Shown one piece after another: positions 27,502 to 62,996 of a stretch of 64,000 bases of DNA; position 1 is the stretch's first letter, and each line of letters starts with the position of its first letter. Location of the stretch: the IMG/VR virus record IMGVR_UViG_3300032236_001850, positions 124,001 through 188,000 of that record. The stretch is one strand, 5' to 3'. Both the position numbers and the translations under genes were made by a program. The notes below the pieces were generated by a model. It had not been told where the DNA came from and made no database searches. It saw only the letters and a list, made by a program, of their open reading frames with translations.

Positions 27502-27520
27502 ACACCGTTGCCGACGGTGT
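27502..27520. repeat. CACCG-N7-CGGTG element, copy 1
   Basis: acaccg-ttgccga-cggtgt, downstream of terminator and upstream of promoter. Confidence 0.9.
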
Positions 27521-27597
27521 TCAGGATGTGGAAAATATATCGGGAAATATTTTTTTATTCGGAAAGAATTTCTTATATTTGTAAAAAGATTTATTGA

Positions 27598-28038
27598 ATG
27601 TTAAAAGAATCAAAACTATACAAAACCTACATCAGATTTAATAAGGACGAGAAGGTCTTTGAGGAGATAGTTCTAGACAGAACACATCAGGAAAGATTCG
27701 AACGTTTTAAATCTCGACTCGAATTTTGTGTCTCTGTTGGGGATTTAGTTAGGGTTAGAGATGGTAGTGGAAATTTAGATTTTGATGATGGAAAGAAACG
27801 ATTCGGCATTGACGAGCTATTCAAACAGAATCCAGCATTAGTCATCGAGACTGGTCTTTCTTTTATAACAGAACCCATGGTGGGAATAGGTGAGAGCTCC
27901 AGATACGTCCTGGATCTACTTCTTCTTTTTCCAGAAGGGGAAAGAGTTTACACGTCGACCACCTTTGTGGAACCGACTAATGATGATGAATGGAGATATT
28001 ACGGAACAACATGGCCAAAATGGGACAGAATCAGATAG
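27598..28038 (+). CDS. Hypothetical SH3/KOW-like protein, C-terminal WDRIR
   Basis: VGDLVRV motif; ends KWDRIR. Confidence 0.8.
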   Translation: MLKESKLYKTYIRFNKDEKVFEEIVLDRTHQERFERFKSRLEFCVSVGDLVRVRDGSGNLDFDDGKKRFGIDELFKQNPALVIETGLSFITEPMVGIGESSRYVLDLLLLFPEGERVYTSTTFVEPTNDDEWRYYGTTWPKWDRIR

Positions 28039-28274
28039 GGGTCATCAAAAATGATATTGAGTTCGATTACAGACTCGATGATCCCTATGCTGGGATTATA
28101 TTTGCTACCCTACGCAAGGGTGAATTTGTTAAACTCAGTAATCCAAGAATTGGTAACTTTGATACTGTTTACTATGATGGTCTAATAACGGAAGGAGAGC
28201 ACAGTGGGGTGGTTTTAAATATAGCAGATTATGATGTTGACATAATAGACACAACATGGAAAAAGATCAGATAG
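28020..28274 (+). CDS. Small beta-barrel-like protein, C-terminal WKKIR
   Basis: Start within 19-nt overlap; ends TWKKIR. Confidence 0.8.
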   Translation: MGQNQIGVIKNDIEFDYRLDDPYAGIIFATLRKGEFVKLSNPRIGNFDTVYYDGLITEGEHSGVVLNIADYDVDIIDTTWKKIR

Positions 28275-28477
28275 CAATATTAAAAAACTCTAGACTTATT
28301 AGATCAAGTAATGGATATGTGCTATGGAAATCAGGAACTGGATTGATAGCAACCAAGACAAATTTTGAGGATTTGTACATCGTAAACACACTAGAGAATA
28401 ACGTTTTACATTGTTCAATATCATCAGCGGAGATAATAATATTAGAATGGGTAAATAAATGGAAAAGACTAAGATAG
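28256..28477 (+). CDS. Small protein, C-terminal WKRLR
   Basis: 19-nt overlap start; ends KWKRLR. Confidence 0.8.
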   Translation: MEKDQIAILKNSRLIRSSNGYVLWKSGTGLIATKTNFEDLYIVNTLENNVLHCSISSAEIIILEWVNKWKRLR

Positions 28478-28740
28478 GTGTTTTAACACAGAAACTGGTC
28501 TTCCAAGAAAAATGTGGGGAAACTTTCAAAGAGATCACGTGGCATAAAGGAACCATAGTGGAGATATACGAATGTGGAGAAAATATTTACCATAAGACCA
28601 AAAGACTTCAGTATCAAGAAAGTGATAAGGTAAAAGTTTACTACTGTAACGAATGGAAGTTTACCATGATAGCTAAACACCGGATAGATGTTATGGAGGT
28701 GGATGATATTAGATGGGAAAAAATATTAAGCAAAGATTAA
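28459..28740 (+). CDS. Small protein, C-terminal WEKIL
   Basis: 19-nt overlap start. Confidence 0.8.
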   Translation: MEKTKIGVLTQKLVFQEKCGETFKEITWHKGTIVEIYECGENIYHKTKRLQYQESDKVKVYYCNEWKFTMIAKHRIDVMEVDDIRWEKILSKD

Positions 28741-28750
28741 AGATTTTAAA

Positions 28751-29026
28751 GTGATACAAGCAAATGACGTGCATATAGCGGTTCTTAAGGAGACATTTAG
28801 GACAACCAATTATCAATCAGGTGGATTTATAACATGGAACGAAAATGAAGCAGTACAGGTCAAGCATAATGGAGTTGACGGATCACCGCTATGGTACTGT
28901 TTAAAATTGGATGAGTCTACGGATGTTGACATTGATGAATTCATATATAATGGTCTTGTAGCTGCTTCGAGCCAGTTGGATTTTATAGAAGTTAATTGGG
29001 TAAATGTAAATGGGATCAACAGATAA
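28751..29026 (+). CDS. Small protein, paralog A1
   Basis: GTG start; first ~108 nt nearly identical to 29173 onward. Confidence 0.8.
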   Translation: MIQANDVHIAVLKETFRTTNYQSGGFITWNENEAVQVKHNGVDGSPLWYCLKLDESTDVDIDEFIYNGLVAASSQLDFIEVNWVNVNGINR

Positions 29027-29159
29027 ATTAGGAGTAGTTAAAAAAATTCGATGCATCCATATACAGAAAAGATCTTATATGGGAGGAAGGAGAGATTGTT
29101 TGGATTGGTGGCGAAGATTAATAGATGGAATCCAAATAGAATTTAAACGAATAAGGTGA
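29010..29159 (+). CDS. 49-aa ORF B1, doubly frameshifted paralog of 29442..29660 (not in ORF track)
   Basis: MGSTDKLGVVKK...IQIEFKRIR; middle DNA aligns to B2 in another frame. Confidence 0.55.
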   Translation: MGSTDKLGVVKKIRCIHIQKRSYMGGRRDCLDWWRRLIDGIQIEFKRIR

Positions 29160-29455
29160 TTGATATGGATGAAATACAGGCAAATGACGTGCGTATAGCG
29201 GTCCTTAATAAGGCATTTAAGACAACCAATTATCAATCAGGTGGATTTATATCATGGAACGAAAATGAAGCAGTACAGGTCATAAAACACGGTGGAAGGA
29301 TGAGTATGCACCTATGGTGCTGTATAAAAATGGAAGATCCAGTAATTGGACTACATAGAAATAATCTACCAAAAAATCTTATTGTTTCTAGGAGTCATTT
29401 GGAGTTTATAAATATGGAGTTTATAAATATAAAAAACGAAGGTGGAACCAACTGA
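29156..29455 (+). CDS. Small protein, paralog A2
   Basis: TTNYQSGGFISWNENEAVQV shared with A1. Confidence 0.8.
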   Translation: MIDMDEIQANDVRIAVLNKAFKTTNYQSGGFISWNENEAVQVIKHGGRMSMHLWCCIKMEDPVIGLHRNNLPKNLIVSRSHLEFINMEFINIKNEGGTN

Positions 29456-29660
29456 TAGATTAGCAATTATAAAGACAGAATTCGAGACATCCATATATGG
29501 GAATGAACTTATATGGAAAGGTGGAGAGATTGTTTGGATTGGCGGGGAAGATGCTATAACTGGTATGGTAACTATTTGCAAATTTGACAAGCCATTTGCA
29601 ACATACGTTCCGAAAGATTCGGTTGATGAATTCATAATAGAATGGCAAAATATTGGATGA
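29442..29660 (+). CDS. Small protein B2, C-terminal WQNIG
   Basis: IWKGGEIVWIGGED; ends IEWQNIG. Confidence 0.8.
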   Translation: MEPTDRLAIIKTEFETSIYGNELIWKGGEIVWIGGEDAITGMVTICKFDKPFATYVPKDSVDEFIIEWQNIG

Positions 29661-29884
29661 TGGAAACTACCAAATATTTAGGTACATTAACAAGATCACT
29701 GGTATCGCAGGATTTAGGAAAGGATAAGATTCTATGGGGTGAGGGTGAAACAGTTATAGTAAAAGAAATTGACGGTAATCCAGAATATTTCAGGATAATC
29801 AAACTACAAAACACATTAGGAAATATGGTAGTGCCACACTCAGCATTCATATACTACAGACCAGACTGGGTCAAATTAAGGTAA
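29642..29884 (+). CDS. Small protein, C-terminal WVKLR
   Basis: 19-nt overlap start; ILWGEGETV resembles B2. Confidence 0.8.
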   Translation: MAKYWMMETTKYLGTLTRSLVSQDLGKDKILWGEGETVIVKEIDGNPEYFRIIKLQNTLGNMVVPHSAFIYYRPDWVKLR

Positions 29885-29939
29885 AAATATTTTTTTATTC
29901 AAAAAGAATTTCTTATATTTGCATATCAAATCAATCAAA

Positions 29940-30140
29940 ATGCAAACAGCAACACTTAGAAGATCGGTTTATACAAAATTTGGAGGTTATTACCCTAAGG
30001 GAGCAAAGGTGGAGGTTGATACAATTGATATGGCTAATGACAGGGTATCAATAAAAAAACTAAACTATGAAGGTCCGATAAGGGTTTCACTTAAACCTAA
30101 GGATTTAATTTTCAATATAAAATGGAAACAACTGACATGA
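29940..30140 (+). CDS. Small protein, C-terminal WKQLT
   Basis: ATG 29940 after early promoter. Confidence 0.8.
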   Translation: MQTATLRRSVYTKFGGYYPKGAKVEVDTIDMANDRVSIKKLNYEGPIRVSLKPKDLIFNIKWKQLT

Positions 30141-30583
30141 TATTTAGCAATTCCTTTTATGGAGCATTTCCTGACATGAAAGGGGAATTGATGCGCAGAA
30201 AAGAGCTTGAAGAAAAATTAGACAGAAAAAGAGGAGAAAATTTTATTAATAAGGGTGATTCGATTTCACATTTTCTAATGAAGGATTTCATTATAAACGA
30301 TGATGGAACGGAAAGACCTATAAAACTCAAAGATATATGCTTCGGAAAACCATTTCAGGGTTTAATTCCATCAAGACCCAGCATTTATGCTGTAACTTCA
30401 GTTCATTATGTAGCTGGTTACAAAATAGTTATAAAAAGATTTCAGGACACTTCAGACGACATCATTTGGTATGAAACACCAATAGACCATTACTACTGCA
30501 AAATATCAGAACTGGAGGGAGTAATACACGAACATCTACTCGAAGCAATACAAAGGGATTCAACATGGAACAGAGTAAAATAG
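30122..30583 (+). CDS. Hypothetical protein, C-terminal WNRVK
   Basis: 19-nt overlap start. Confidence 0.8.
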   Translation: METTDMIFSNSFYGAFPDMKGELMRRKELEEKLDRKRGENFINKGDSISHFLMKDFIINDDGTERPIKLKDICFGKPFQGLIPSRPSIYAVTSVHYVAGYKIVIKRFQDTSDDIIWYETPIDHYYCKISELEGVIHEHLLEAIQRDSTWNRVK

Positions 30584-30912
30584 GATTCTTTATAATCAGA
30601 ACGTTCGACGATCTTGTGTTTACTAGAGACGATTTTAGTGGATATCCTGATCAGTACACTGTGGAGATGCTAGAAAGAATAACCCCATTCAGAGCAAGAA
30701 TGAAATTCGAAAAGGAGTTTGGAGGAGATGACACGGAAGCTAGTGTGATCTATGGGGCATCAACATACTCAACCAAAGGAAGGGATGGGGAATATGACAC
30801 ATTTGAGGTTTGGTATTCGGATGAGGATGAACCTAGAGGTTACGAAACCAAGGAACAAATAAATGCAGAATTTCTAAGAAGGAGTTTAAATAAAACATCA
30901 CTGGAGTTATGA
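30565..30912 (+). CDS. Hypothetical protein
   Basis: 19-nt overlap start; ATGA coupling to next gene. Confidence 0.8.
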   Translation: MEQSKIGFFIIRTFDDLVFTRDDFSGYPDQYTVEMLERITPFRARMKFEKEFGGDDTEASVIYGASTYSTKGRDGEYDTFEVWYSDEDEPRGYETKEQINAEFLRRSLNKTSLEL

Positions 30913-31097
30913 AAGTAAAAATATTTAAAAGTTGGATGATTGAGGAACAGCAGAACGAGATCAATCAATGGTTTTCTGAAAATAATGTTATAGTACATAA
31001 CATCACGCAGTCAACCGGGGGAGAGACCACACAATGGACAATCATATCTATATTCTACACAGAAGTTAAACAATTGGAATTTGAAAAAGTTAAGTAA
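30909..31097 (+). CDS. Cse60-like small protein, C-terminal FEKVK
   Basis: KVKIF...EINQWFSEN...ISIFY; paralog of 58060 and 60875. Confidence 0.75.
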   Translation: MKVKIFKSWMIEEQQNEINQWFSENNVIVHNITQSTGGETTQWTIISIFYTEVKQLEFEKVK

Positions 31098-31381
31098 TGG
31101 AGGATTCTACATATCATGCTACACTACTGGGGAAGATAAATGCGATGAAATTTTATGAATTTGTATATGACGACAAGTTTCCTAATCCGTTAGTCAATAG
31201 AAATCTATTAAATGGCCAAAGATATACGATATTCATCAATTCACACACAACCGGAACACATAACAGATTTCTGATGAATGGTAAATTTAACACCGGGTAC
31301 GGCAGCATAAGCTTCGGTGGGGAAATACTTGGAAATATACTAACAATAGGAAATCCTCCACAATTTCAAAAAATTCTTTAA
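31097..31381 (+). CDS. Hypothetical protein, C-terminal FQKIL
   Basis: TAATG coupling. Confidence 0.75.
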   Translation: MEDSTYHATLLGKINAMKFYEFVYDDKFPNPLVNRNLLNGQRYTIFINSHTTGTHNRFLMNGKFNTGYGSISFGGEILGNILTIGNPPQFQKIL

Positions 31382-31441
31382 ATAATTTTTTTATTCAAAA
31401 AGGATTTTATATATTTGCCATGTAATCAAAATGAAAACACA

Positions 31442-31819
31442 ATGGCATACAACGTAACTACATGGAAAATGAAGAGCATGGATAATCTAGTTATCCCACT
31501 TGCAGCTCTTTACGAATCACCAAGAAAAGACTGGCATCCTAAGGAGCCAAAAATCAAAGACGCAGTCACTATGGAGGTTTCTCTACAATGCGGATGTGAG
31601 CAGGAAATTGTTGGGATTCTGAAAGAAGGAAACCTACACGTCACCAAACTCTCAATGTCGGGTGAAGGATCAGGGGGATTTATTGGCGGAGTGCTTAGAC
31701 CAGCATTAGAAAAAAGCACAGGATCATTCTCAGCTTTAGCTGTTTGGGAGGGAGGAGATTCCATAACTAATATTGGATTCCAAGATGGATTCTACAAAGA
31801 GGAGGACGTAGAGCTATGA
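31442..31819 (+). CDS. Hypothetical protein
   Basis: ATG 31442 after early promoter; AVWEGGDSI. Confidence 0.8.
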   Translation: MAYNVTTWKMKSMDNLVIPLAALYESPRKDWHPKEPKIKDAVTMEVSLQCGCEQEIVGILKEGNLHVTKLSMSGEGSGGFIGGVLRPALEKSTGSFSALAVWEGGDSITNIGFQDGFYKEEDVEL

Positions 31820-32250
31820 AATATCCAAACCCAATAGACACACTGTTTAGTGAGCACCTTCATGGCAAAGAAGCCTATATCAGGGCAGCAGGTTTAGTAT
31901 CAGAAGGAAACATAGACTCCAAATGTATAATGGAATACCGTAAGTACAGCGGTGTGGTATGCAAATCAGAGCTCAAGTGGAACGCAGTTGAAATCAAGGA
32001 TGAATTTCTAAAGAAGTTAAACTCAATTAGGGAGGAAGCTGGACTGACTTATGATATGCGTGATGCTGTACACAAGGGAGCAAACGAATTGTTTGACACA
32101 CTCCACGTTAAAGTTGGTATGATTTACTATCACTCGGTAGTTAAACACGAGGTACTAACAGATAAGGATGGCGTGATAACAAGAGTTGATTTAACTTACG
32201 AAAACGGTACAACCGTAGAGATTAGAAACATAACTAACATAAGAAAATAA
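31816..32250 (+). CDS. Hypothetical protein
   Basis: ATGA coupling. Confidence 0.8.
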   Translation: MKYPNPIDTLFSEHLHGKEAYIRAAGLVSEGNIDSKCIMEYRKYSGVVCKSELKWNAVEIKDEFLKKLNSIREEAGLTYDMRDAVHKGANELFDTLHVKVGMIYYHSVVKHEVLTDKDGVITRVDLTYENGTTVEIRNITNIRK

Positions 32251-32254
32251 AACC

Positions 32255-32644
32255 ATGGACACAAAAATATATTTTGACGTTGAGAAAATAAGCGTCATAG
32301 AAGTTAGACCAGAAACCCTATCAGACTATGTTTTCTATCCAGAAAAACCGGCCTACCAGAGGCACATCTTTGGTTTCATCCCATCAGGTAAGAACCCATA
32401 TCTTCCGCCAAGATGGAGTTCCGACGAAGGATGGTTTTATAAAACCGACGAGGATCTAAGATCTTATAACCACTATCGAATAGACGACGTTGAGAAAAAG
32501 ATATATCACAGAGCACGTGTGGTGATTCATCTTGGCTACAAGGAGAGTGTTAATAGAGTATTTGACTCAACGGATGAAGCAATGGAATGGGCGGATCATA
32601 TAATTAGAACATCAGGAAAAAACTTAGAATTATTAATCAAATAA
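32255..32644 (+). CDS. Hypothetical protein
   Basis: 129 aa. Confidence 0.8.
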   Translation: MDTKIYFDVEKISVIEVRPETLSDYVFYPEKPAYQRHIFGFIPSGKNPYLPPRWSSDEGWFYKTDEDLRSYNHYRIDDVEKKIYHRARVVIHLGYKESVNRVFDSTDEAMEWADHIIRTSGKNLELLIK

Positions 32645-32652
32645 AATTAGAA

Positions 32653-33060
32653 ATGGCAACAAGATCAAGAATTGGAATTGAGAGAGAAAACGGACATATA
32701 GAATCCATCTATTGTCACTGGGATGGCTATCCTAGCCACAATGGTAAAATCTTAGCGGAACATTACACGGACCCGGAAAAAATTAAAGCATTAATAGCAC
32801 TGGGTGACATCAGCTCATTAAACGAAAACGTTAGTCCTGCCGACGGTGTTGAACATTCATTCGATAAACCAGCAGAGAATGTAACAGTAGCATATCACAG
32901 AGACAGAGGTGAGGATTTAACCAAAGCAAGAGTAAGCTACTCAATGAAAGGTTTCGAACAAAGCGACTACGAGGAATATGGATACATATTTACAAAAGAC
33001 AACCAATGGAAAGTGGTTGGAGTTAAAAAATGCTTCGTTCCGCTAGCTGACGTTATATAA
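32653..33060 (+). CDS. Conserved-type phage hypothetical (TRSRIG...YCHWDGYP family)
   Basis: MATRSRIGI...IYCHWDGYPSHNG...YHRDRGE. Confidence 0.88.
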   Translation: MATRSRIGIERENGHIESIYCHWDGYPSHNGKILAEHYTDPEKIKALIALGDISSLNENVSPADGVEHSFDKPAENVTVAYHRDRGEDLTKARVSYSMKGFEQSDYEEYGYIFTKDNQWKVVGVKKCFVPLADVI

Positions 33061-33081
33061 TAGAAACCAATACAAGTTAAT

Positions 33082-33118
33082 AAAATCCGAATAAATATTT
33101 TTTTATTCGGATTTTTTT
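33082..33118 (+). terminator. Terminator overlapping next promoter
   Basis: AATCCGAATAAA-tattt-TTTATTCGGATT-T run. Confidence 0.75.
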
Positions 33119-33146
33119 ATTATATTTGCTTATTAAATCCAATTAA

Positions 33147-33452: not shown

Positions 33453-33652
33453 TAATAGACACAATATACATACCAGCATTGAGCTTTTTAGTTCTATGTT
33501 TTCTCACTTTAATAGCCAATGGTTTTAAAGCAGACGTACCTGAAAATCGTCTGGCCTTGGTTTTTATGGTTTTAGCAGTAATCAATCTTTACTATGATGT
33601 TATATTCTACTTTGTTAAACTCGTAGAATGGATGCTATCATCAGTTGTTTAG
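33449..33652 (+). CDS. Small membrane protein
   Basis: Two hydrophobic helices; ATGA coupling. Confidence 0.75.
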   Translation: MIIDTIYIPALSFLVLCFLTLIANGFKADVPENRLALVFMVLAVINLYYDVIFYFVKLVEWMLSSVV

Positions 33653-52365: not shown

Positions 52366-52390
52366 CATACTATGTTACTAACATACTATG
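52366..52390. repeat. Nested palindrome element, copy 2
   Basis: catactatgttactaacatactatg. Confidence 0.9.
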
Positions 52391-52415: not shown

Positions 52416-52619
52416 ATGCGCAGACTTAAGAACGGATGGGAGATCGCGGGAGCGACATCAATATGTATTGCTCTCGCGAGCATCTTTATATACATCATGT
52501 GGGAACTCGGCTTATATGGGATGCCTAGTACTACCGATGTGGTTGTCTCAGTAGTACTCACAGCTGTCACACTCTTTCTCTTTATCTGGAGCCCACCCGA
52601 CGAGAACTCTAATACATAG
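52416..52619 (+). CDS. 67-aa two-TM protein flanked by palindrome repeats
   Basis: MRRLKNGWEIAG...; stop codon lies inside repeat copy 3. Confidence 0.7.
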   Translation: MRRLKNGWEIAGATSICIALASIFIYIMWELGLYGMPSTTDVVVSVVLTAVTLFLFIWSPPDENSNT

Positions 52620-52640
52620 TATGTTACTAACATACTATGT
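52614..52640. repeat. Nested palindrome element, copy 3 (perfect 13-bp arms)
   Basis: ACATAGTATGTTA-C-TAACATACTATGT. Confidence 0.92.
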
Positions 52641-54914: not shown

Positions 54915-54938
54915 CATACTATGTTACTAACATACTAT
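54915..54938. repeat. Nested palindrome element, copy 4
   Basis: catactatgttactaacatactat, 2 nt after a stop codon. Confidence 0.9.
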
Positions 54939-54957
54939 CCACACGCGTACATTTAAA

Positions 54958-56215: not shown

Positions 56216-56239
56216 AAGAGGCTTCGGCCTCTTTTTTTT
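56216..56239 (+). terminator. Intrinsic terminator (identical family copy 1)
   Basis: AAGAGGC-TTCG-GCCTCTT-T run. Confidence 0.92.
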
Positions 56240-56265: not shown

Positions 56266-56284
56266 ACACCGTTGTCGACGGTGT
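56266..56284. repeat. CACCG-N7-CGGTG element, copy 2
   Basis: acaccg-ttgtcga-cggtgt. Confidence 0.9.
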
Positions 56285-56428
56285 TTTGGATGTTGCCATG
56301 AACATGCCGATTTAACATATGGATTTTTATGGATGTCCTATGGTAAACACCGTGGTAGAAACTTTAACGTTTTTAATCGTTTGTATGTAAAACCTTTCTC
56401 TTATATTTGCCTCGTAATTAAAACCAAA

Positions 56429-57019: not shown

Positions 57020-57523
57020 ATGAACAAAAATGAAAAAAAAGCTGGAAACAGCGCAGTAGCAGCTTCGGCTGGGAAAGTTGAAAAAATGGCAAAAGCAGTT
57101 GTCAAAAAAGAAACTGCTAAAGTAGATGCTCCTGAGGCAGCAGTGGCTGAGGTGCCTGCACCGCTAGTACCGCACATCAACGGTGCCTTCGAAGTGGGGT
57201 CAAGAATCGAAACTTCATTGGTTTCTCCATTGAAAGTTTTCGGTAAAAAAGAAGCAACTGGTACTCCGGCTCAAATGAAGCCATGTGCTGCAATCATCTT
57301 AGAAAAGTTGGCCATCGCTGGTCCTACTGGAACTAACTTGATTAGAGTTAAAAAACCAGGTTCAACACGTATTTTCTACACAACTGAGGAAAACCTAATC
57401 GTAGGAGAGGGTGCACCAGCAGCGGTGGTAACGGCTCCAGTCGTTAAGGAGGAAAAACCTGCACCTGCACCAAAGGCTGCAAAAGCTCCAAAAGCTGAAA
57501 CAGTTGCAGAGACTGCTGAGTAA
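57020..57523 (+). CDS. Ala/Lys/Pro-rich protein with central small domain
   Basis: KPAPAPKAAKAPKAE tail. Confidence 0.8.
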   Translation: MNKNEKKAGNSAVAASAGKVEKMAKAVVKKETAKVDAPEAAVAEVPAPLVPHINGAFEVGSRIETSLVSPLKVFGKKEATGTPAQMKPCAAIILEKLAIAGPTGTNLIRVKKPGSTRIFYTTEENLIVGEGAPAAVVTAPVVKEEKPAPAPKAAKAPKAETVAETAE

Positions 57524-57541
57524 TCAGTAACCCACGGTATT

Positions 57542-57566
57542 AAAAGAGGCTTCGGCCTCTTTTTTT
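57542..57566 (+). terminator. Intrinsic terminator (identical family copy 2)
   Basis: AAGAGGC-TTCG-GCCTCTT-T run. Confidence 0.92.
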
Positions 57567-57601
57567 GTGGGCAAAGAATTCCTATGTCGGACCATGTGAT
57601 C

Positions 57602-57618
57602 CACCGTTGTCGACGGTG
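57602..57618. repeat. CACCG-N7-CGGTG element, copy 3
   Basis: caccg-ttgtcga-cggtg. Confidence 0.9.
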
Positions 57619-57722
57619 TTGGGGTTTGTCCCGCCTGAAACATGTCAAAAAAATAATTGATAAATTATCGTTGTGTTTGCTAAGGATTTATTATATTTGC
57701 TTTGTAATTAAACTATAACAAT

Positions 57723-58076
57723 ATGGATGAACTTGATGACGTATTGGAAAGGCTCAATGTCTTGGCAGAGAGGGTAAGAGCAATCAGAGAAACTCTGGAG
57801 GAAGTTGAAACAAAGGTTGGAGAGATCAAAGGACTTGAAGCCCGTATGGATTTTATAAAGAGAGCCAGAAGATTCACCAGCCACGACGAAGCTCTTGTAT
57901 GGAAAAATATAGAGGATGGTATCATCCGAAAAATAGACACGGCTTCGCCCGAACAGATGCAGATGCTTTTGGATAAGAAGGGATTTGCATTTAGATACTA
58001 TCCCGAGATATACGACGGTGTGGATAAGCTGGGCATGTTAACAATCAAAGAAAAACGATATGACACTACGATGTAA
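57723..58076 (+). CDS. Coiled-coil hypothetical protein
   Basis: After promoter 57692. Confidence 0.8.
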   Translation: MDELDDVLERLNVLAERVRAIRETLEEVETKVGEIKGLEARMDFIKRARRFTSHDEALVWKNIEDGIIRKIDTASPEQMQMLLDKKGFAFRYYPEIYDGVDKLGMLTIKEKRYDTTM

Positions 58077-58242
58077 AATATTCAGAAAGGTCAAGGTAAG
58101 TGATCTTGAAACGGAGATCAACAACTGGCTGGAATCCAATGATGATGTTGTGATTTCACAAGTAACACACAGCGAAGACGACCAATGGGGTACAGTTATT
58201 ATTTTCTATTCTAGAAAATTGGAATACGTAAAAGTGAAATAA
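58060..58242 (+). CDS. Cse60-like small protein, C-terminal YVKVK
   Basis: KIF...LETEINNWLESN...VIIFY. Confidence 0.75.
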   Translation: MTLRCKIFRKVKVSDLETEINNWLESNDDVVISQVTHSEDDQWGTVIIFYSRKLEYVKVK

Positions 58243-58314
58243 ACTTTAACGGTTTTTATCGTGGTTATGTAAAATATATAGCTTATATTTACATGTAATT
58301 AAAACAATAACATT

Positions 58315-58869
58315 ATGAACAAACCAAAATTATTTCCGGGATTTCCACAGGGAGACTTCGGAGCACTTAGAGAAGGCGTAATAAGAACAGCAAGCATTTT
58401 CGCAGAGGAAGGTGGAGAAAAAAACAGAAAAATAGCATCGGTGCTTAGCGTGCTTGGTGACGCAATGGCAGACCAGAAGCTATATGAAAACATCTACAAA
58501 GGAGTAGAAAAGGATTATAACATGTACCACAATTGGTGGAACAGAGAGATGTACCAGAAGGTAGGTGGGGAAATGGGTTCAGGTAAACTTGTAGCACTAG
58601 CCCAGGATGAAATGCCAAAACACATTTCTGATGCTGTTGAAGGCGTATCATACCAAGGAATGTATCTTCTACAAATGCAAATCCAGGCATCTAAAGATGG
58701 TGGACAACTATCAAGAATTGGCACACATCCAGACTTTAAGGAACAACTACATGTTTTCCATCAAATAATTTGGTTTATTTATATGGCAATACTTTACCCT
58801 AATGGTCTAAATATGATTTCCAAAATCTTCATATCCAACAGTGGCAAATCAGGAAAGAATTGGGCATAA
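58315..58869 (+). CDS. Hypothetical protein
   Basis: 184 aa with own promoter and terminator. Confidence 0.82.
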   Translation: MNKPKLFPGFPQGDFGALREGVIRTASIFAEEGGEKNRKIASVLSVLGDAMADQKLYENIYKGVEKDYNMYHNWWNREMYQKVGGEMGSGKLVALAQDEMPKHISDAVEGVSYQGMYLLQMQIQASKDGGQLSRIGTHPDFKEQLHVFHQIIWFIYMAILYPNGLNMISKIFISNSGKSGKNWA

Positions 58870-58887
58870 GAAATCCCACACACAATT

Positions 58888-58911
58888 AAAGAGGCTTCGG
58901 CCTCTTTTTTT
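58888..58911 (+). terminator. Intrinsic terminator (identical family copy 3)
   Basis: AAGAGGC-TTCG-GCCTCTT-T run. Confidence 0.92.
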
Positions 58912-58937
58912 ATGACATCAGGCTGTGCCTATGAGAT

Positions 58938-58956
58938 ACACCGAGGCCGACGGTGT
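58938..58956. repeat. CACCG-N7-CGGTG element, copy 4
   Basis: acaccg-aggccga-cggtgt. Confidence 0.9.
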
Positions 58957-59086
58957 TAGGAATCGATGAATCCGCCATGTCAAAAATAAAAAATCAAAAT
59001 TAAATTTTAACGAAAACTTTAACGTTTGACATCGTTGTGTCTACTAAGAATTTCTTACATTTACATGTAATTAAAATCAAAACATC

Positions 59087-59875
59087 ATGTCAGAAGAAAC
59101 AAAAACACCAGAAGTAAAGGAAGTAGATTTCATCCTTGAATTGAATGAGGAGCTTAAGAAATTAGAGGACATCAGAGAATTATTCATTTGCCAATCCTAT
59201 GCTGAGGAATTCAATGAAAGGGATGAGAGAATTCTCAAGGAGGTTAAAATACCGATTCATCAGGGAGGACAGGAATGTGGTAAAGTTGATATCGGTGAAT
59301 ACATCAGCTTATATCTGGATGACATCAAGCACCAAGGGAAACCCGAGAGAGTGTTCTCCAACGGTAGAAACCCATTCAGAGGACCAAAAGAAATTCCTGT
59401 ATTCTCGGGAGATAAATCTGGACCAAGAGAAATGTTGAAGTGTGAGATAACTCCAGAGGAGGAAGCGAAGATTGCACAATTCGAGAAGACACACATTAAA
59501 CCATCTGGACCAAGTGATACCATCATCGGTGAATTGTTCCGAGCATTCCAAAGAATCGAATACAGAGCAGGTAACGACGGTGACAACTTCATGTGCATCG
59601 GAACACCAAGCTTCGAATCTTTTCTTTACATCATGTCCACATTGGATATCATCAATTGGGGTTGGTTGTATGATAAGGAAATCCAATTAAAAAATCCACT
59701 TCTCCAAGTTTGGGTATACAGTAACAGAATCACATGGGAAGGTGAACTATTCGAAATCAAGTTTGTCCAATTGATTCTTATCGAATTATTGGAAACCGGG
59801 GTGATTAAGGACAGACCTAATGATATGGATTCACGAGATTTTATGAAAATAAAATCTGATAATGATCGTTGGTGA
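59087..59875 (+). CDS. Hypothetical protein
   Basis: 262 aa; SGPSDTIIGELFRAFQRIEYRAGNDGD. Confidence 0.85.
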   Translation: MSEETKTPEVKEVDFILELNEELKKLEDIRELFICQSYAEEFNERDERILKEVKIPIHQGGQECGKVDIGEYISLYLDDIKHQGKPERVFSNGRNPFRGPKEIPVFSGDKSGPREMLKCEITPEEEAKIAQFEKTHIKPSGPSDTIIGELFRAFQRIEYRAGNDGDNFMCIGTPSFESFLYIMSTLDIINWGWLYDKEIQLKNPLLQVWVYSNRITWEGELFEIKFVQLILIELLETGVIKDRPNDMDSRDFMKIKSDNDRW

Positions 59876-59921
59876 TTGAAAAGGATTTATTATATTTGTC
59901 ATGTAATTAAAATCAAAACAA

Positions 59922-60155
59922 ATGGAAAAAAAATTATTTTGTGTGATGTTCACCAGTCGGGATGACTGGGACTCACCAACTGTTGTCTTCGTTAATGCAA
60001 CGGACAGGGACAAAGCTTACTTTGCCGCTCTAAAGAAAATTGGATTTACTGAAGAGGAAGATGAGGAGATGAGAGAGCGAGGAGACCATGATAACGTCAT
60101 CATCGAAGTGGATGACACCATAGACGAAGATTACGAACCAACTGAAGATGAATAA
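59922..60155 (+). CDS. Acidic hypothetical protein
   Basis: After promoter 59891. Confidence 0.8.
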   Translation: MEKKLFCVMFTSRDDWDSPTVVFVNATDRDKAYFAALKKIGFTEEEDEEMRERGDHDNVIIEVDDTIDEDYEPTEDE

Positions 60156-60157
60156 TT

Positions 60158-60352
60158 ATGGCAAAGAAAACTGTATTGGATTTTCTCTTATCCATAGCTA
60201 TCACGGTCTTGGTGTATTCTATTCTTACCGCACCACATCTATGTTTAATCCTTTTTGGATTCGGGTTTGCTTACTCTCAGGGTTGGTGTATTACATGTGG
60301 TGTGGCTTCGGCTATTATCGGTCATATTATATCAGACAAGTTGAAAATTTAA
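60158..60352 (+). CDS. Small membrane protein
   Basis: Two to three hydrophobic segments. Confidence 0.75.
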   Translation: MAKKTVLDFLLSIAITVLVYSILTAPHLCLILFGFGFAYSQGWCITCGVASAIIGHIISDKLKI

Positions 60353-60419
60353 CGTTTTAAATCATTGCCACGTAAAAAAGATTTCTTATATTAGCCACGT
60401 AATTAAAATCAATCACATC

Positions 60420-60641
60420 ATGAGCACATTAAGACCAGGTGATCCAGTAAGAGTCACACAAGAACCAAAATCAAGATTCAATCAACACCCAACCAAAGTT
60501 GGCATAGGTCATGTCTATGTACGTAGCGGACAAAGTGGAAATTCACTCTATGTGGCAGTGGCTTGGGAAGATGGAAATTGTTGCAATGGTTTATTAAGTT
60601 CCTTTACAACTGTAGAAAAAATAAATATTTCTAAAATATAG
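60420..60641 (+). CDS. SH3/KOW-like small protein
   Basis: LRPGDPVRV...VAWEDG; paralog of 63154..63504. Confidence 0.78.
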   Translation: MSTLRPGDPVRVTQEPKSRFNQHPTKVGIGHVYVRSGQSGNSLYVAVAWEDGNCCNGLLSSFTTVEKINISKI

Positions 60642-60732
60642 GGAATAAAAATGAAACATTAGGTATTATTACTACTATAATATCTGTTAAATCGGATTTA
60701 ACAATTCAATTTGATATTCATGTTATGTTTTT

Positions 60733-60760
60733 AAAGGAGCTTACCCGGCTCCTTTTTTTT
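60733..60760 (+). terminator. Intrinsic terminator
   Basis: AAGGAGC-ttacccg-GCTCCTT-T run. Confidence 0.88.
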
Positions 60761-60770
60761 ATGTATAAAA

Positions 60771-60795
60771 CATACTATGTTAGTAACATACTATG
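60771..60795. repeat. Nested palindrome element, copy 5
   Basis: catactatgttagtaacatactatg between terminator and promoter. Confidence 0.9.
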
Positions 60796-60874
60796 TCCAC
60801 GCGAGAACTTTAACGTTTGGCCTCGTGCGTATATGAAAAAGATTTCTTATATTTGCTTTATAATTAAATGGAAC

Positions 60875-61090
60875 ATGAAGTTTTTTCTTGTCACATCAGA
60901 CGAAATGCAAACCCTAAGGGATAAGGTTAACCAATTCTTGGATGAGCATCCTGGCATCATCCTACATAGTCATCAATTCGCAACATGTGGGACAACTGGT
61001 AAGAACAAATATGTTTCCATATTTTATGACGATGCACCAGAATATTTAAAAATAAAAAACAATGACAAAGGAACAGAAAGAACTTTATAA
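60875..61090 (+). CDS. Cse60-like small protein
   Basis: ATG 60875; LRDKVNQFLDEH...VSIFY. Confidence 0.75.
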   Translation: MKFFLVTSDEMQTLRDKVNQFLDEHPGIILHSHQFATCGTTGKNKYVSIFYDDAPEYLKIKNNDKGTERTL

Positions 61091-61235
61091 AAGGATCAAA
61101 GCAAAAGCAAAGGACAGAGGGGTAAAAACCGTGGACGAGTTACACGACCTAATCGCAGACGAGTTTTACGACGACGGTGTAACTGGAGCGGACTTTGAAT
61201 TCATCAAAGACTCACTTAGACTCAAGAGGTTTTAA
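61062..61235 (+). CDS. 57-aa hypothetical protein (not in ORF track)
   Basis: MTKEQKELYKRIKAKAKDRGV... Confidence 0.7.
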   Translation: MTKEQKELYKRIKAKAKDRGVKTVDELHDLIADEFYDDGVTGADFEFIKDSLRLKRF

Positions 61236-61259
61236 TTACACATACTTCTTTTTGAAAGG

Positions 61260-61286
61260 GGCTTTCTTTATAAGAAAGCCTTTTTT
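61260..61286 (+). terminator. Intrinsic terminator
   Basis: GGCTTTCTT-tat-AAGAAAGCC-T6. Confidence 0.88.
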
Positions 61287-61324
61287 GTTGGCATTGACAT
61301 GGAAAATGCATGTACATGCATATT

Positions 61325-61341
61325 CACCGGCGGCGACGGTG
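61325..61341. repeat. CACCG-N7-CGGTG element, copy 5
   Basis: caccg-gcggcga-cggtg. Confidence 0.9.
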
Positions 61342-61440
61342 TGGAGGATGTAGGCGGATTAATTCGGAAAATAATTCGGATTTATCGTTGGTATATAAAA
61401 AAGGTTACTTATATTTGCATGTAATTAAAATCAAAACATT

Positions 61441-61632
61441 ATGGACGAGACATTAAAAGGTAAGAGAATCACATTAATAAAAATGGGTGATGACCCAAAT
61501 CCAATAAAGGCAGGAGAAATGGGAACCATCCAAGGTGTGGATGGCATCGGCCAGATCCACGTCAATTGGGACAACGGTAGAAGTCTAGCGCTAATACCAG
61601 GTACCGATGTATATCAAATTATAAGAGAATAA
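61441..61632 (+). CDS. DUF4314 protein
   Basis: GKRITLIKMGDDPNPIKAGEMGTIQGVDGIGQIHVNWDNGRSLALIPGTD. Confidence 0.88.
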   Translation: MDETLKGKRITLIKMGDDPNPIKAGEMGTIQGVDGIGQIHVNWDNGRSLALIPGTDVYQIIRE

Positions 61633-61811
61633 TGTACAAGTTTGGAAAATTCCCAACCCATACGGGTGGTCTAAAAAAAGGCCAATATGCGGATAAAAGG
61701 ATGGATCCTAGAAGAATACAGATTGTCAGAAGAGCAGAGAAGATTCAACACACATTTCCAAATAGAAGTTTATTCTCAGCTATAAGATATATTTTGAAAT
61801 ACGGTAATTAA
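61632..61811 (+). CDS. 59-aa basic protein (not in ORF track)
   Basis: TAATG coupling; MYKFGKFPTHTGG... Confidence 0.65.
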   Translation: MYKFGKFPTHTGGLKKGQYADKRMDPRRIQIVRRAEKIQHTFPNRSLFSAIRYILKYGN

Positions 61812-61840
61812 TAATTGGTTAGGTTTTTTAATTCAGAATC

Positions 61841-61866
61841 AGGCTTTCTTAAAGAAAGCCTTTTTT
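61841..61866 (+). terminator. Intrinsic terminator
   Basis: GGCTTTCTT-a-AAGAAAGCC-T6, near copy of 61260. Confidence 0.8.
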
Positions 61867-61900
61867 GTGACCAAAGGATTTTATAGGCAAGACCATAAAA

Positions 61901-61917
61901 CACCGGCGGCAACGGTG
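61901..61917. repeat. CACCG-N7-CGGTG element, copy 6
   Basis: caccg-gcggcaa-cggtg. Confidence 0.88.
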
Positions 61918-62009
61918 GAAAAGATGTTGAAAGATGTCAAAAAGGATGAAGAAGAAATGAAGATGATGTATAAAGATGTACAAAGAGATGTATCCTTCAC
62001 ACCGCGGTT

Positions 62010-62031
62010 CATACTATGTTAGTAACATACT
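62010..62031. repeat. Nested palindrome element, copy 6
   Basis: catactatgttagtaacatact. Confidence 0.88.
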
Positions 62032-62117
62032 CTCCACGCGTATTGAATTTTAACGGTGGTTTGCATGGTAATTATGAAGTATTCATTATATTTGCTATGT
62101 AATTAAAACAATTAAAC

Positions 62118-62312
62118 ATGGAAGAACAAGTTAAAGAAGCCAGAGAACACTTCAGAAATCACAAATCACATATACACATTTATCAGATAGAAGATGATGT
62201 CATAGCCGAACTCCTCGGGCGAGAGCATATTCAAAGATTATCTTTCGAGATGAAGATGGATTGCCTTTATGACCATTTGCTTTCCCAAGGTCTTTGTGAT
62301 GTGACCGAATAA
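62118..62312 (+). CDS. Hypothetical protein
   Basis: After class II promoter. Confidence 0.75.
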   Translation: MEEQVKEAREHFRNHKSHIHIYQIEDDVIAELLGREHIQRLSFEMKMDCLYDHLLSQGLCDVTE

Positions 62313-62332
62313 TTCACATGTAAACACATATT

Positions 62333-62349
62333 CACCGCCGGCCGAGGTG
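62333..62349. repeat. CACCG-N7-CGGTG element, copy 7 (imperfect)
   Basis: caccg-ccggccg-aggtg. Confidence 0.7.
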
Positions 62350-62470
62350 GTCTAGCGGGATCCCTGACAGGATAAAAAAATTCCGATGGATACTTGAAAT
62401 TTTAACGTTTTATATCGTGGTTTATCAATAGGAATGCCTTATATTTGCCATGTAATTAAAACCAATCAAT

Positions 62471-62713
62471 ATGAATCAAATCACACACGAACAATTAAGA
62501 AATCGGCTTAGAGAAGGTTCAACCCGATTCTTTTTCAGAAAGACCAACGGTGAACTAAGACCTGCCTATGGCACAACAGATTTAACAAGAATTCCAAACC
62601 ATTCCCATCCAAAGGGAGGTGACGCCCCGGTGGGTACCACTTGCTACTTTGACCTCGATAAGAATGCTTGGCGCTCAGTTTCACACACCCAAGAAATTTG
62701 GTCCAATGAATAA
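62471..62713 (+). CDS. WYL_2/DUF2693-like SH3 beta-barrel protein
   Basis: FFFRKTNGELRPAYGT...YFDLDKNAWRSV. Confidence 0.82.
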   Translation: MNQITHEQLRNRLREGSTRFFFRKTNGELRPAYGTTDLTRIPNHSHPKGGDAPVGTTCYFDLDKNAWRSVSHTQEIWSNE

Positions 62714-62885
62714 ACATGAAATCATAAGCAAGACCAGAAGACTGCTAAACTCCGCGGGCTTCGATGATATGGAATACACAATCAGCTTGCAAGGTCCAAC
62801 GGTGATAATGGGAGAGGGCATGGAGGAAAAATTAACACCAGAATTACGAAAAGAAATCCTGGAAACAGGAATGAAGTTTCTATAA
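62706..62885 (+). CDS. Hypothetical protein
   Basis: ATG 62706 overlapping upstream stop. Confidence 0.7.
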   Translation: MNKHEIISKTRRLLNSAGFDDMEYTISLQGPTVIMGEGMEEKLTPELRKEILETGMKFL

Positions 62886-62917
62886 CCAGGACTTCCTGCT
62901 TTGGTCAGGTTATAGCT

Positions 62918-62950
62918 AAAGGGTGACATTTGAGAGTCACCCTTTTTTTT
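62918..62950 (+). terminator. Intrinsic terminator
   Basis: AAGGGTGAC-atttgaga-GTCACCCTT-T run. Confidence 0.88.
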
Positions 62951-62979
62951 GTGGCATGAATTAGGCCTGGATACTTGCC

Positions 62980-62996
62980 CACCGAGGTCGACGGTG
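62980..62996. repeat. CACCG-N7-CGGTG element, copy 8
   Basis: caccg-aggtcga-cggtg. Confidence 0.9.

What the first reader, a model, noticed from the sequence alone, without database searches (positions are those of the whole stretch)
27502..62996. GC-rich CACCG-N7-CGGTG element at a fixed slot between terminator and next promoter (8 copies): a cassette architecture
Seen: copies at 27502, 56266, 57602, 58938, 61325, 61901, 62333 (imperfect) and 62980. Seven lie about 25-40 nt after a terminator U-tract; all lie upstream of a promoter. Spacer consensus is NNGNCGA, usually followed by TGT..GGA, and the flanks are rich in CATG. From 55.8 to 64 kb the layout repeats: promoter, 1-2 genes, terminator, element. 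Known: PeSL cassettes of T4-type phages and the SPO1 host-takeover region show one-promoter-per-gene modules shuffled by recombination. Inference: operator array for a phage regulator, recombination/shuffling site, or structured RNA/DNA hairpin; the motif itself is unfamiliar to me.
Basis: partly seen in the sequence, partly recalled or inferred. Interest (0 to 1): 0.8.

Follow-up and report, generated by a model that had tools for sequence, protein, structure and literature searches.

The report
Palindromic protein-binding sites after megaphage terminators
A 17-base GC-rich palindrome sits just after the terminator of nearly every small early-type gene unit in one block of a 434-kb uncultivated phage and its relatives. 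It looks like the docking site of an unidentified paired DNA-binding protein, not a hairpin or a recombination site.

Summary
The window holds 7 exact and 1 near copies of CACCG-N7-CGGTG (0.01 and 0.24 expected). All 8 fit a refined consensus, CACC-N3-G-N-C-N3-GGTG (0.00 expected).

The window comes from a 434.5-kb phage contig with Bacteroidota-type promoters. The array runs past the window end to position 69,626, with 16 copies in 13.4 kb plus the solo copy at 27,503. The same element, in the same slot after a terminator T-run, occurs in about a dozen other huge-phage contigs and in no bacterial genome.

Conservation is base-specific and two-fold symmetric, including the central G and C. Those two bases lie one base apart and cannot pair. 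There is no covariation: 0.089 observed against 0.085 in shuffles. Half-sites vary independently, and information is confined to the 17-mer.

A single CACCG half-site also sits at a fixed position in 17 of 43 promoters of one class, usually 69-93 bp downstream of a full palindrome.

Best reading: an operator array for a dimeric, probably phage-encoded, DNA-binding protein placed at boundaries between co-directional transcription units. No binder was found. The cassette architecture and shuffling are real, but they are explained by repeated terminators and promoters. This is a new variant of a known kind.

The parts
27503..27519 (.). Solo copy of the 17-bp palindrome (CACCGTTGCCGACGGTG). It lies between the gene at 26279-27418 and the promoter of 27598-28038.
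   Evidence: Terminator 27448-27475 ends 27 nt upstream. The -7 box is at 27574-27581. Orthologous copies exist in the 430-kb relative.
56267..56283 (.). Palindrome copy, first of the array.
   Evidence: Terminator 56218-56239 ends 27 nt upstream. An orthologous copy in relative L002 at 8522 keeps the arms and central G/C while the other spacer bases change.
57602..57618 (.). Palindrome copy.
   Evidence: Terminator 57546-57566 ends 35 nt upstream. The -7 box is at 57692.
58939..58955 (.). Palindrome copy.
   Evidence: Terminator 58891-58911 ends 27 nt upstream. The -7 box is at 59056. Its ortholog is L002 9866.
61325..61341 (.). Palindrome copy in a compact module. Its centre lies 77 nt before the -7 box at 61410.
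   Evidence: Terminator 61260-61286 ends 38 nt upstream. Orthologs exist in two relatives.
61901..61917 (.). Palindrome copy.
   Evidence: Terminator 61842-61866 ends 34 nt upstream. The -7 box is at 62087.
62333..62349 (.). Palindrome copy with one common half-site (CACCGCCG) and one variant half-site (CACCTCGG, read on the other strand). It has no canonical terminator upstream.
   Evidence: The sequence is identical in both close relatives. The -7 box is at 62440.
62980..62996 (.). Palindrome copy.
   Evidence: Terminator 62921-62950 ends 29 nt upstream. The half-site is at 63068 and the -7 box at 63122.
56218..56239 (+). Intrinsic terminator (GAGGCTTCGGCCTC plus T-run). It is one of three identical copies, the others at 57546-57566 and 58891-58911. 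These form the upstream half of the terminator-element module.
   Evidence: The segment from about 57570 to 59050, bounded by two of these identical terminators, is absent in relative L002.
56347..56369 (+). Single CACCG half-site, 14 nt before the CTTTAACG box of a class-B promoter and 73 bp downstream of the centre of palindrome 56267.
   Evidence: The same arrangement is seen at 63068 and, beyond the window, at 67184 and 68310.
63068..63089 (+). Single CACCG half-site, 14 nt before the CTTTAACG box, 80 bp downstream of the centre of palindrome 62980.
56402..56421 (+). Example of the cassette promoter core: a Bacteroidota-type -7 box (TATATTTG) followed by GTAATTAAAA. There are 15 such cores in the window, 12 of them between 55287 and 62440.

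Best explanation
The element is a double-stranded DNA binding site (operator) for a homodimeric, sequence-specific protein, most likely encoded by the phage.

Each monomer reads an 8-bp half-site. The common form is CACCG-N-N-G and the variant is CACCTCGG. The two conserved CACC blocks are centred 13 bp apart, a little over one helical turn.

Sites sit in the short non-transcribed gap between the terminator of one early-type unit and the promoter of the next co-directional unit. This holds across a block of about 14 kb with roughly 25 small genes.

From these sites the protein co-ordinately controls the block. The mechanism I commit to is as follows. The bound dimer communicates with the downstream promoter, in class-B promoters by looping to a single promoter-proximal CACCG half-site 69-93 bp away. 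This would switch the cassette promoters as a group, most plausibly shutting them off after the early phase. The same bound protein would also block polymerases that leak or slide past the terminator.

Shown here: the anatomy, the symmetry, the absence of covariation, conservation across a clade, and the positional rules. Inferred: that a protein binds, that it is phage-encoded, and the direction of regulation.
For: 1. Far above chance: 8 copies against 0.00-0.24 expected. L001 has 16 copies and L002 has 13.

2. Two-fold symmetry of the conserved positions. The arms, spacer position 3 (G) and spacer position 5 (C) are invariant in all 29 copies of the unbiased N7 searches and in 82 distinct copies. 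Information is confined to the 17-mer, with a weak A before and T after it.

3. Half-sites vary independently. The variant CACCTCGG recurs in several clades and is usually partnered with a common half-site.

4. No covariation. Score 0.089 against 0.085 in shuffles (196 of 500 reach it). Paired cells 81.7% against 81.6%. Arm pair 5/13 is unpaired in 14 copies and compensated in 1. Symmetric spacer positions show no excess of Watson-Crick pairs: 35 against 30 expected, and 17 against 25.6.

5. At orthologous intergenic sites in relatives with about 80% protein identity, the arms and central G/C are kept while flanks and other spacer bases diverge.

6. The terminator-plus-element composite occurs in 26 stretches from about 12 huge-phage contigs. 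Among bacterial genomes there are only chance singles and one mis-binned phage.

7. Position. In the window plus L001, 12 of 19 predicted + strand terminators carry the element 27-39 nt after the T-run. Four of those without it pair with a − strand terminator between convergent genes, and two lie inside genes. Across the family, 52 of 114 terminators carry it, with a bimodal mismatch distribution. The spacing is rarely under about 24 nt, which fits a bound protein kept clear of the downstream footprint of a terminating polymerase (inference).

8. Link to promoters. 17 of 43 distinct class-B promoters carry a lone CACCG at -13/-14 from the CTTTAACG box. Twelve of these have a palindrome 69-93 bp upstream, clustering near 70, 81 and 92. 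In compact class-A modules the palindrome centre lies 73-77 nt before the -7 box in three clades.

9. One relative has three copies in tandem, 66 and 76 bp apart, after one terminator. This is typical of co-operative operators.
Against: No binding protein was identified. Pfam scans of 147 ORFs of the window region and 119 ORFs of three relatives gave no helix-turn-helix, ribbon-helix-helix or ParB-type hit. Only 76 kb of the 434-kb genome could be read, and short phage regulators often escape Pfam.

Distances to the -7 box range from 63 to 277 nt without clear helical phasing (Rayleigh p of 0.07 or higher). That is unusual for a classical repressor or class-I activator.

Promoters not preceded by a terminator lack the element. 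The element therefore tracks unit boundaries, not promoters as such.

The phasing hint for half-site loops rests on 12 cases that are partly orthologous.

No expression or binding data exist.
Confidence: 0.45

Rival explanations
1. Terminator-coupled roadblock or insulator. A protein bound at the palindrome has no dialogue with the promoter. Its job is to stop polymerases that read through or slide on after the intrinsic terminator, so that each cassette is an independent unit. This would be a symmetric, terminator-proximal analogue of mycobacteriophage stoperators.
For: The element tracks terminators more tightly than promoters: 27-39 nt after the T-run in the window, against 63-277 nt to the -7 box. 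It is present only where a terminator is followed by a co-directional unit. Promoters without an upstream terminator have none. Repressor-bound intergenic sites that block elongation are known in phage L5 (PMC5712189). Post-termination sliding of RNA polymerase, and its block by a bound repressor, has been observed in vitro (bioRxiv 10.1101/2023.11.02.565415).
Against: The terminators already look strong, with GC-rich stems and T-runs of 5-8 bases. Several copies have no terminator upstream: 62333, 64801, 68029 and 69176, and tandem extras in relatives. The lone half-site built into class-B promoters points to promoter involvement.
Confidence: 0.25
2. Loading or nucleation sites for a ParB/KorB-like or chromatin-type protein. 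The protein would spread, slide or bridge from the sites to silence or organise the whole block, or serve as a centromere-like cluster.
For: The array is a cluster of 16 palindromes of 17 bp in 13.4 kb, plus a solo copy. Their variable distance from promoters resembles distal KorB operators and chromosomal parS clusters (my recollection, not tested). All but one of the 17 copies lie outside predicted coding sequence. The most widely conserved array gene (57020-57523) models as an SH3-like beta core with disordered Lys/Ala/Pro-rich tails, a chromatin-protein look.
Against: No ParB, Srx or ParA partner was found in the 76 kb read. CbiA/ParA-type hits in relatives are weak and overlap a KaiC/RecA-like ATPase. 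The fold match of the 57020 protein to Cren7 is not significant (E 0.46). One site per transcription-unit boundary is not how parS clusters are laid out.
Confidence: 0.1
3. Site for recombination or cassette mobility. This would be an attC-like or tyrosine-recombinase core site, or a REP-like selfish palindrome, that moves promoter-gene-terminator cassettes.
For: Inverted arms around a 7-bp spacer resemble recombinase core sites. The block is a hyperplastic region. Whole cassettes are present, absent or replaced between relatives with about 80% identity, and gene order is shuffled between clades. Composite terminator/promoter repeats are tied to such plasticity in T4-type phages (PMC2839356, PMC4122927).
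Against: Only 5-bp arms plus two central bases are conserved, and spacers differ between copies, which would prevent strand exchange between them. The one indel resolved to the base (about 57570-59050) is bounded by identical 21-22 nt terminators, not by the element. The roughly 80-nt promoters cross-match everywhere and give ample homology. No integrase or transposase was found nearby. There is no REP-type hairpin covariation.
Confidence: 0.07
4. Functional hairpin in single-stranded nucleic acid. This could be an RNA stem-loop on read-through transcripts (stability, processing, a boxB-like antitermination signal) or an extruded DNA hairpin such as the early promoters read by the phage N4 virion polymerase.
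For: All copies can form a 5-7 bp GC-rich stem. They lie in an AT-rich early-type region, upstream of genes.
Against: There is no covariation beyond shuffles, and 14 copies break pair 5/13 against 1 that compensates. None of the 9 variant copies after terminators is compensatory. Energies of -4.3 to -9.2 kcal/mol are mostly within 2 sd of shuffles. The invariant central G and C are one base apart and cannot pair. The position after strong terminators means little transcription. There is no Rfam match. The loop is 5-7 nt, not the 3 nt of N4 promoters (my recollection).
Confidence: 0.06

Closest known systems
PeSL (promoter-early stem-loop) cassettes of T4-type phages (PMC2839356, PMC4122927)
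   Same: Repeated composite terminator and early-promoter modules flank small, mostly unknown genes in a hyperplastic region. Indels and replacements of whole cassettes occur between close relatives.
   Different: A third, strongly conserved part, the 17-bp GC-rich palindrome, lies between terminator and promoter. The promoters are Bacteroidota type (TAnnTTTG). The phage is a roughly 434-kb megaphage unrelated to T4 as far as tested.
Stoperators of mycobacteriophage L5 and Cluster A phages (PMC5712189)
   Same: Two dozen or so copies of one short site lie in intergenic regions and are bound by a single phage protein that affects transcription units genome-wide. Deletions arise between copies.
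   Different: Stoperators are asymmetric 13-mers oriented with transcription, lie inside transcribed regions, and belong to a temperate repressor. Here the sites are symmetric 17-mers, sit after terminators, and are concentrated in one block. No repressor is known.
Classical dimeric phage operators (lambda, 434 and P22 CI/Cro) and looping operators such as lac O1-O3 (my recollection)
   Same: They are 14-18 bp dyads read as two half-sites. Lambda half-sites even contain CACCG. Auxiliary sites tens of bp away act through loops.
   Different: Those operators overlap the promoters they control and number three to six per genome. Here the sites lie 63-277 bp upstream, number about 17, and follow terminators. 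The spacing of the CACCG blocks differs from lambda (7 against 3 intervening bases).
KorB operators of IncP plasmids and parS clusters (my recollection)
   Same: Multiple copies of one 13-16 bp palindrome lie at variable distances from the promoters they influence.
   Different: No ParB-family gene was found in the region read. There is one site per unit boundary.
REP/BIME elements of enterobacteria (my recollection)
   Same: GC-rich palindromes in extragenic DNA at the 3' ends of genes.
   Different: REPs are longer, imperfect, structure-conserved hairpins with a GTAG head and a RAYT transposase. Here conservation is base-specific, with no covariation.

Membership tests
Palindromic operator of a dimeric DNA-binding protein | Dyad-symmetric, base-specific conservation with half-sites about one helical turn apart | tested here: met
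   Arms, central G and central C are invariant or nearly so in 82 distinct copies, and information is limited to the 17-mer. The conserved CACC blocks are centred 13 bp apart.
Palindromic operator of a dimeric DNA-binding protein | Half-sites vary independently, with no selection for pairing | tested here: met
   Mixed sites combine a common and a variant half-site. Covariation equals shuffles.
Palindromic operator of a dimeric DNA-binding protein | A cognate binding protein exists | tested here: inconclusive
   No DNA-binding domain was found among 147 + 119 ORFs. Only about 17% of the genome was readable.
PeSL-type regulatory cassettes | Repeated terminator stem-loop plus early promoter at boundaries of variable small ORFs | tested here: met
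PeSL-type regulatory cassettes | Indels between close relatives bounded by the repeated modules | tested here: met
   The segment at about 57570-59050 lies between identical terminators and is absent in L002. Other cassette gains and replacements are also seen.
PeSL-type regulatory cassettes | T4-type phage with a sigma-70 early promoter consensus | tested here: not met
   The promoters have TAnnTTTG -7 boxes. The sigma-70 scan is at shuffle level, 38 against 32.9. The nearest cultured relatives by protein are jumbo phages of Chryseobacterium and Tenacibaculum.
Stoperators (L5-like) | Asymmetric site, one orientation relative to transcription, inside transcribed regions | tested here: not met
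   The site is symmetric and lies after terminators.
Structured RNA or DNA hairpin (REP-like, boxB-like, N4 promoter-like) | Stem kept by compensatory change | tested here: not met
   score 0.089 against 0.085 in shuffles, and pair 5/13 has 14 unpaired against 1 compensated; 0 of 9 variants are compensatory.
Structured RNA families in Rfam; tRNA-like elements | Match to a curated covariance model, or a tRNA fold | tested here: not met
   No Rfam match at gathering score. No tRNA or tmRNA.
Integron attC or tyrosine-recombinase core site | Arms of 9 bp or more, identical overlap region between partner sites, recombinase gene nearby | tested here: not met
   The arms are 5 bp. Spacers differ among copies. 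No integrase was found in the ORFs scanned.
ParB-parS or KorB-operator systems | ParB-family protein encoded by the replicon | tested here: inconclusive
   None was found in 76 kb of the source or 60 kb of relatives. The rest of the genome was not read.

The most novel reading that the evidence does not exclude
A clade of 300-430 kb phages has evolved a dedicated boundary element. A phage protein docks on a fixed palindrome a set distance behind intrinsic terminators. There it either enforces termination and insulates tandem early units from leaking or sliding host polymerase, or loads a mobile or looping regulator that switches the whole block. In either case terminator, protein site and promoter would work as one three-part module. 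That arrangement has not been described in phages or bacteria.
Probability: 0.2. Interest if true: 0.75.

Novelty: new variant of a known kind. Interest (0 to 1): 0.55.

Why it matters
Huge phages are known almost only from metagenomes, and nothing is known about how they time the expression of hundreds of genes.

This element gives a concrete, conserved cis-regulatory handle. It is one 17-mer, about 17 copies per genome, in a defined slot, shared by about a dozen independent huge-phage assemblies. It can be used to fish for its binding protein, to delimit the early host-takeover block, and to recognise members of this clade.

If the site proves to work with the terminator, it would add a protein-assisted layer to intrinsic termination and unit insulation. 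If it works with the promoter, it defines a regulon and a new operator-regulator pair for Bacteroidota systems, where few genetic parts exist.

The cassette block also extends the PeSL idea of regulatory-module-driven gene shuffling to an unrelated phage lineage.

Tried and rejected
Adding the terminator T-run to the pattern solved this.
- Megablast of 9 kb of the array against GenBank phages found nothing. tblastn of the 57020 protein found nothing. The 26279 protein matched only a 484-kb uncultured phage at 25% identity. No cultured system is therefore available.
- Rfam and tRNA scans found nothing.
- Pfam or PHROGs on cassette proteins found no DNA-binding family.
- The 57020-57523 protein was tried as a binder candidate. 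The model has a confident beta core only, and there is no significant PDB match (best is Cren7 at E 0.46). The Atlas lead to MotB and SH3-like families scores 0.70-0.71, below the tool's lead threshold. Two further Atlas queries were uninformative.
- Helical phasing between the palindrome and the -7 box was not significant.
- A sigma-54 type reading of the promoter (GG/GC spacing) was rejected by inspection. The spacing is 13 nt, not 10.
- A restriction-site reading was rejected. Such sites would be avoided, not placed in one intergenic slot.
- A tRNA arm-like reading of the 5-bp stem and 7-nt loop was rejected. The loop lacks the conserved positions, and ARAGORN finds nothing.

Full report
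**What is there**

The pattern CACCG-N7-CGGTG occurs 7 times exactly in the 64-kb window (0.01 expected) and 8 times with one mismatch allowed (0.24 expected). Starts are 27503, 56267, 57602, 58939, 61325, 61901, 62333 and 62980. A refined consensus derived below, CACC-N3-G-N-C-N3-GGTG, fits all eight exactly, with 0.00 expected.

**Source and setting**

- A gene next to the array placed the window in IMG/VR contig UViG_3300032236_001850, which is 434,509 bp. The window is about 124,001-188,000 of that contig.
- An independent ENA assembly of the same phage is 434,721 bp with a different start point.
- The DNA is about 36% G+C.
- Promoters carry the Bacteroidota -7 box TAnnTTTG, followed by a conserved GTAATTAAAA leader. 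An E. coli-type promoter scan is at shuffle level.
- The nearest cultured relatives by protein are jumbo phages of Chryseobacterium and Tenacibaculum, at about 30% identity.
- The array genes are small and unknown to Pfam and PHROGs. One has Lar-like restriction-alleviation matches. This fits an early, host-takeover type block, which is an inference.

**Extent of the array**

The array does not stop at the window end. L001 and L147 extend the sequence to window-equivalent 75,922. Copies continue to 69,626 and then stop. That gives 16 copies (at most one mismatch) in 13.4 kb, plus the solo copy at 27,503. A scan of the viral collection returned only these stretches of the 434-kb contig.

**Positional rules**

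- In the 69.9 kb analysed, 12 of 19 predicted + strand intrinsic terminators are followed by the element 27-39 nt after the T-run. Of the seven without it, four pair with a − strand terminator between convergent genes and two lie inside genes (independent scan).
- Promoters that follow a gene directly, without a terminator, have no element. The element therefore marks boundaries between co-directional transcription units.
- Across all family sequences, 43 of 114 distinct predicted terminators have an exact copy within 70 nt downstream, 8 have a one-mismatch copy and 1 a two-mismatch copy. The rest have four or more mismatches, a clean bimodal split.
- Distance to the T-run is 16-55 nt over the family, mostly 24-45.
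- Distance from the palindrome centre to the -7 box is 63-277 nt. A compact class at 73-77 nt recurs in three clades.

**Relatives**

A pattern joining the T-run to the element found 26 stretches in the viral collection. They come from about a dozen contigs of 56-434 kb, mostly over 200 kb. The same scan of 185,579 species genomes gave only scattered singles and one 'MAG' with nine matches on four contigs. That MAG is evidently a binned phage. The element is a hallmark of one clade of huge phages, not of a host.

**Anatomy**

In 82 distinct copies the arms are nearly invariant, and spacer positions 3 (G) and 5 (C) are invariant. They are also invariant in the 29 copies found without constraining the spacer.

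The conserved positions are two-fold symmetric about the central base. The site reads as two 8-bp half-sites: CACCG-N-N-G, usually CACCGTCG or CACCGTTG. A second half-site type, CACCTCGG, recurs in several clades and is usually combined with a common half-site. Window copy 62333 is one example.

Information content is confined to the 17-mer, with a weak A before it and T after it. The flanks are enriched in ACATG, GCATG and GGATG, but not at fixed positions.

**Protein site or hairpin**

- Counting pairs for a 7-bp stem on the 82 copies gives 81.7% paired cells against 81.6% in shuffles. The covariation score is 0.089 against 0.085, reached by 196 of 500 shuffles.
- Arm pair 5/13 is unpaired in 14 copies and compensated in one.
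- None of nine variant copies behind terminators is compensatory.
- Symmetric spacer positions show no excess of Watson-Crick pairs.
- Single-strand folding gives -4.3 to -9.2 kcal/mol, mostly within two standard deviations of shuffles.
- The invariant central G and C are separated by one base and cannot pair.
- The element follows strong terminators, so it is rarely transcribed.
- There is no Rfam or tRNA match.

Conservation is thus of sequence, not of structure. That is the signature of a dimeric protein reading double-stranded DNA.

**Purifying selection**

In orthologous intergenic regions of two relatives (about 70-90% protein identity), the arms and central G/C are retained. The other spacer bases and the flanks change freely.

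**Link to promoters**

Two promoter classes share the -7 box. Class A has a T-rich upstream block. Class B has CTTTAACG about 40 nt before the -7 box.

- Of 43 distinct class-B promoters in the family, 17 carry a lone CACCG exactly 13-14 nt before CTTTAACG.
- Twelve of those 17 have a full palindrome 69-93 bp upstream, with distances grouped near 70, 81 and 92. Rayleigh p is about 0.03 for an 11-bp period, but n = 12 and the cases are partly orthologous, so this is only a hint.
- A half-site of the same sequence built into a promoter suggests that the protein also acts at promoters, possibly by looping.
- One relative carries three palindromes in tandem behind one terminator.

**Cassettes and shuffling**

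The block is collinear in the two close relatives, but with whole cassettes missing, added or replaced. In more distant clades the shared genes appear in a different order.

The one indel resolved to the base (about 57,570-59,050, absent in L002) lies between two copies of an identical terminator. The roughly 80-nt promoters cross-match throughout.

The region therefore behaves like the PeSL hyperplastic regions of T4-type phages (PMC2839356, PMC4122927). The repeated terminators and promoters suffice to explain the shuffling. The palindrome, with 5-bp arms and non-identical spacers, is a poor recombination substrate.

**Who binds**

This remains unknown. Pfam on 147 ORFs of the source region and 119 ORFs of three relatives shows no recognisable DNA-binding regulator or ParB.

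The most widely shared array gene is 57020-57523. It is found only in the same nine contigs. Its model has a confident all-beta, SH3-like core and disordered Lys/Ala/Pro-rich tails. It has no significant structural match. It is a lead for a general DNA-binding protein, not a demonstrated partner.

**Mechanism**

About 0.8 of my belief goes to 'a protein-binding site on duplex DNA'. Within that, I favour a co-ordinating regulator of the cassette promoters that also acts as a barrier behind the terminator (0.45). A pure roadblock or insulator gets 0.25, and a ParB/KorB-like loading or nucleation site gets 0.10. Recombination site (0.07) and functional hairpin (0.06) are minor.

The minimum spacing of about 24 nt from the T-run fits the need to keep a bound protein clear of the downstream footprint of a terminating polymerase. 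This is an inference from general knowledge of elongation complexes.

**Comparison with known systems**

It works most like dispersed phage operator sets, such as L5 stoperators (PMC5712189). It sits in a PeSL-like cassette architecture. It fails defining features of both: stoperators are asymmetric and lie in transcribed DNA, and PeSLs are two-part modules in T4-type phages. I therefore rate it a new variant of a known kind.

**Limits**

There are no expression or binding data. Only about 17% of the genome was read, and there is no cultured host.

Noticed in passing
window 7299-7323, 52366-52390, 52615-52639, 54915-54939, 60771-60795, 62010-62031: A second, unrelated palindrome of about 22 bp, CATACTATGTTA[G/C]TAACATACT, occurs at six sites (0.00 expected). 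In the array it sits just upstream of class-B promoters whose CACCG half-site is replaced by CACGCGAG. It is probably the operator of another regulator.
   Followed up: partly
window 13449-62440 (15 promoter cores); class-B boxes at 56362, 56927, 58244, 59017, 60808, 63082, 63774: There are two promoter classes. Both have a Bacteroidota-type -7 box (TAnnTTTG) followed by a conserved GTAATTAAAA leader. Class A has an ATAATTTTTTTATTTGAAAA upstream block. Class B has AACTTTAACGTTTnnATCG about 40 nt upstream. They may be temporal classes.
   Followed up: partly
window 57020-57523: This 167-aa protein has a conserved core of about 70 aa that models as an all-beta, SH3-like fold (pLDDT about 85), flanked by disordered Lys/Ala/Pro-rich tails reminiscent of linker histones. 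Homologues in distant clades keep only the core. The family was found only in the nine element-bearing huge-phage contigs.
   Followed up: partly
window 56218-56239, 57546-57566, 58891-58911: There are three identical terminators (GAGGCTTCGGCCTC plus T-run). The segment between the second and third, carrying three genes, is missing in the 66-kb relative. This is consistent with homologous recombination between terminators.
   Followed up: yes
window 61918-62000: A run of six short GATG repeats lies between palindrome 61901 and its promoter. More generally, GGATG tends to follow the palindrome by 4-5 nt, and ATCC tends to precede it in some copies.
   Followed up: no
window 25413-26177: A 254-aa ORF has sub-threshold GIY-YIG (E 0.022) and NUMOD-like matches and a GIY..YIG-type N-terminus. 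It is possibly a Seg-like homing endonuclease, and it lies next to a KaiC/RecA-like ATPase (24365-25378).
   Followed up: partly
L215 18778-18936 (430-kb relative, contig 3300034116_002156): Three copies of the palindrome lie in tandem, 66 and 76 bp apart, behind a single terminator. The window's genome has one copy at this place (67106).
   Followed up: partly
L001 15665-15961 (window-equivalent 64751-65047): A 98-aa Cys-rich basic ORF has Lar-like restriction-alleviation matches. It contains a one-mismatch copy of the palindrome (64801) inside its coding sequence, the only intragenic copy.
   Followed up: no
whole window: The window belongs to a roughly 434.5-kb phage genome that was assembled twice independently (JGI 434,509 bp; ENA 434,721 bp, different start point). 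This suggests a complete, circularly permuted or circular genome.
   Followed up: partly
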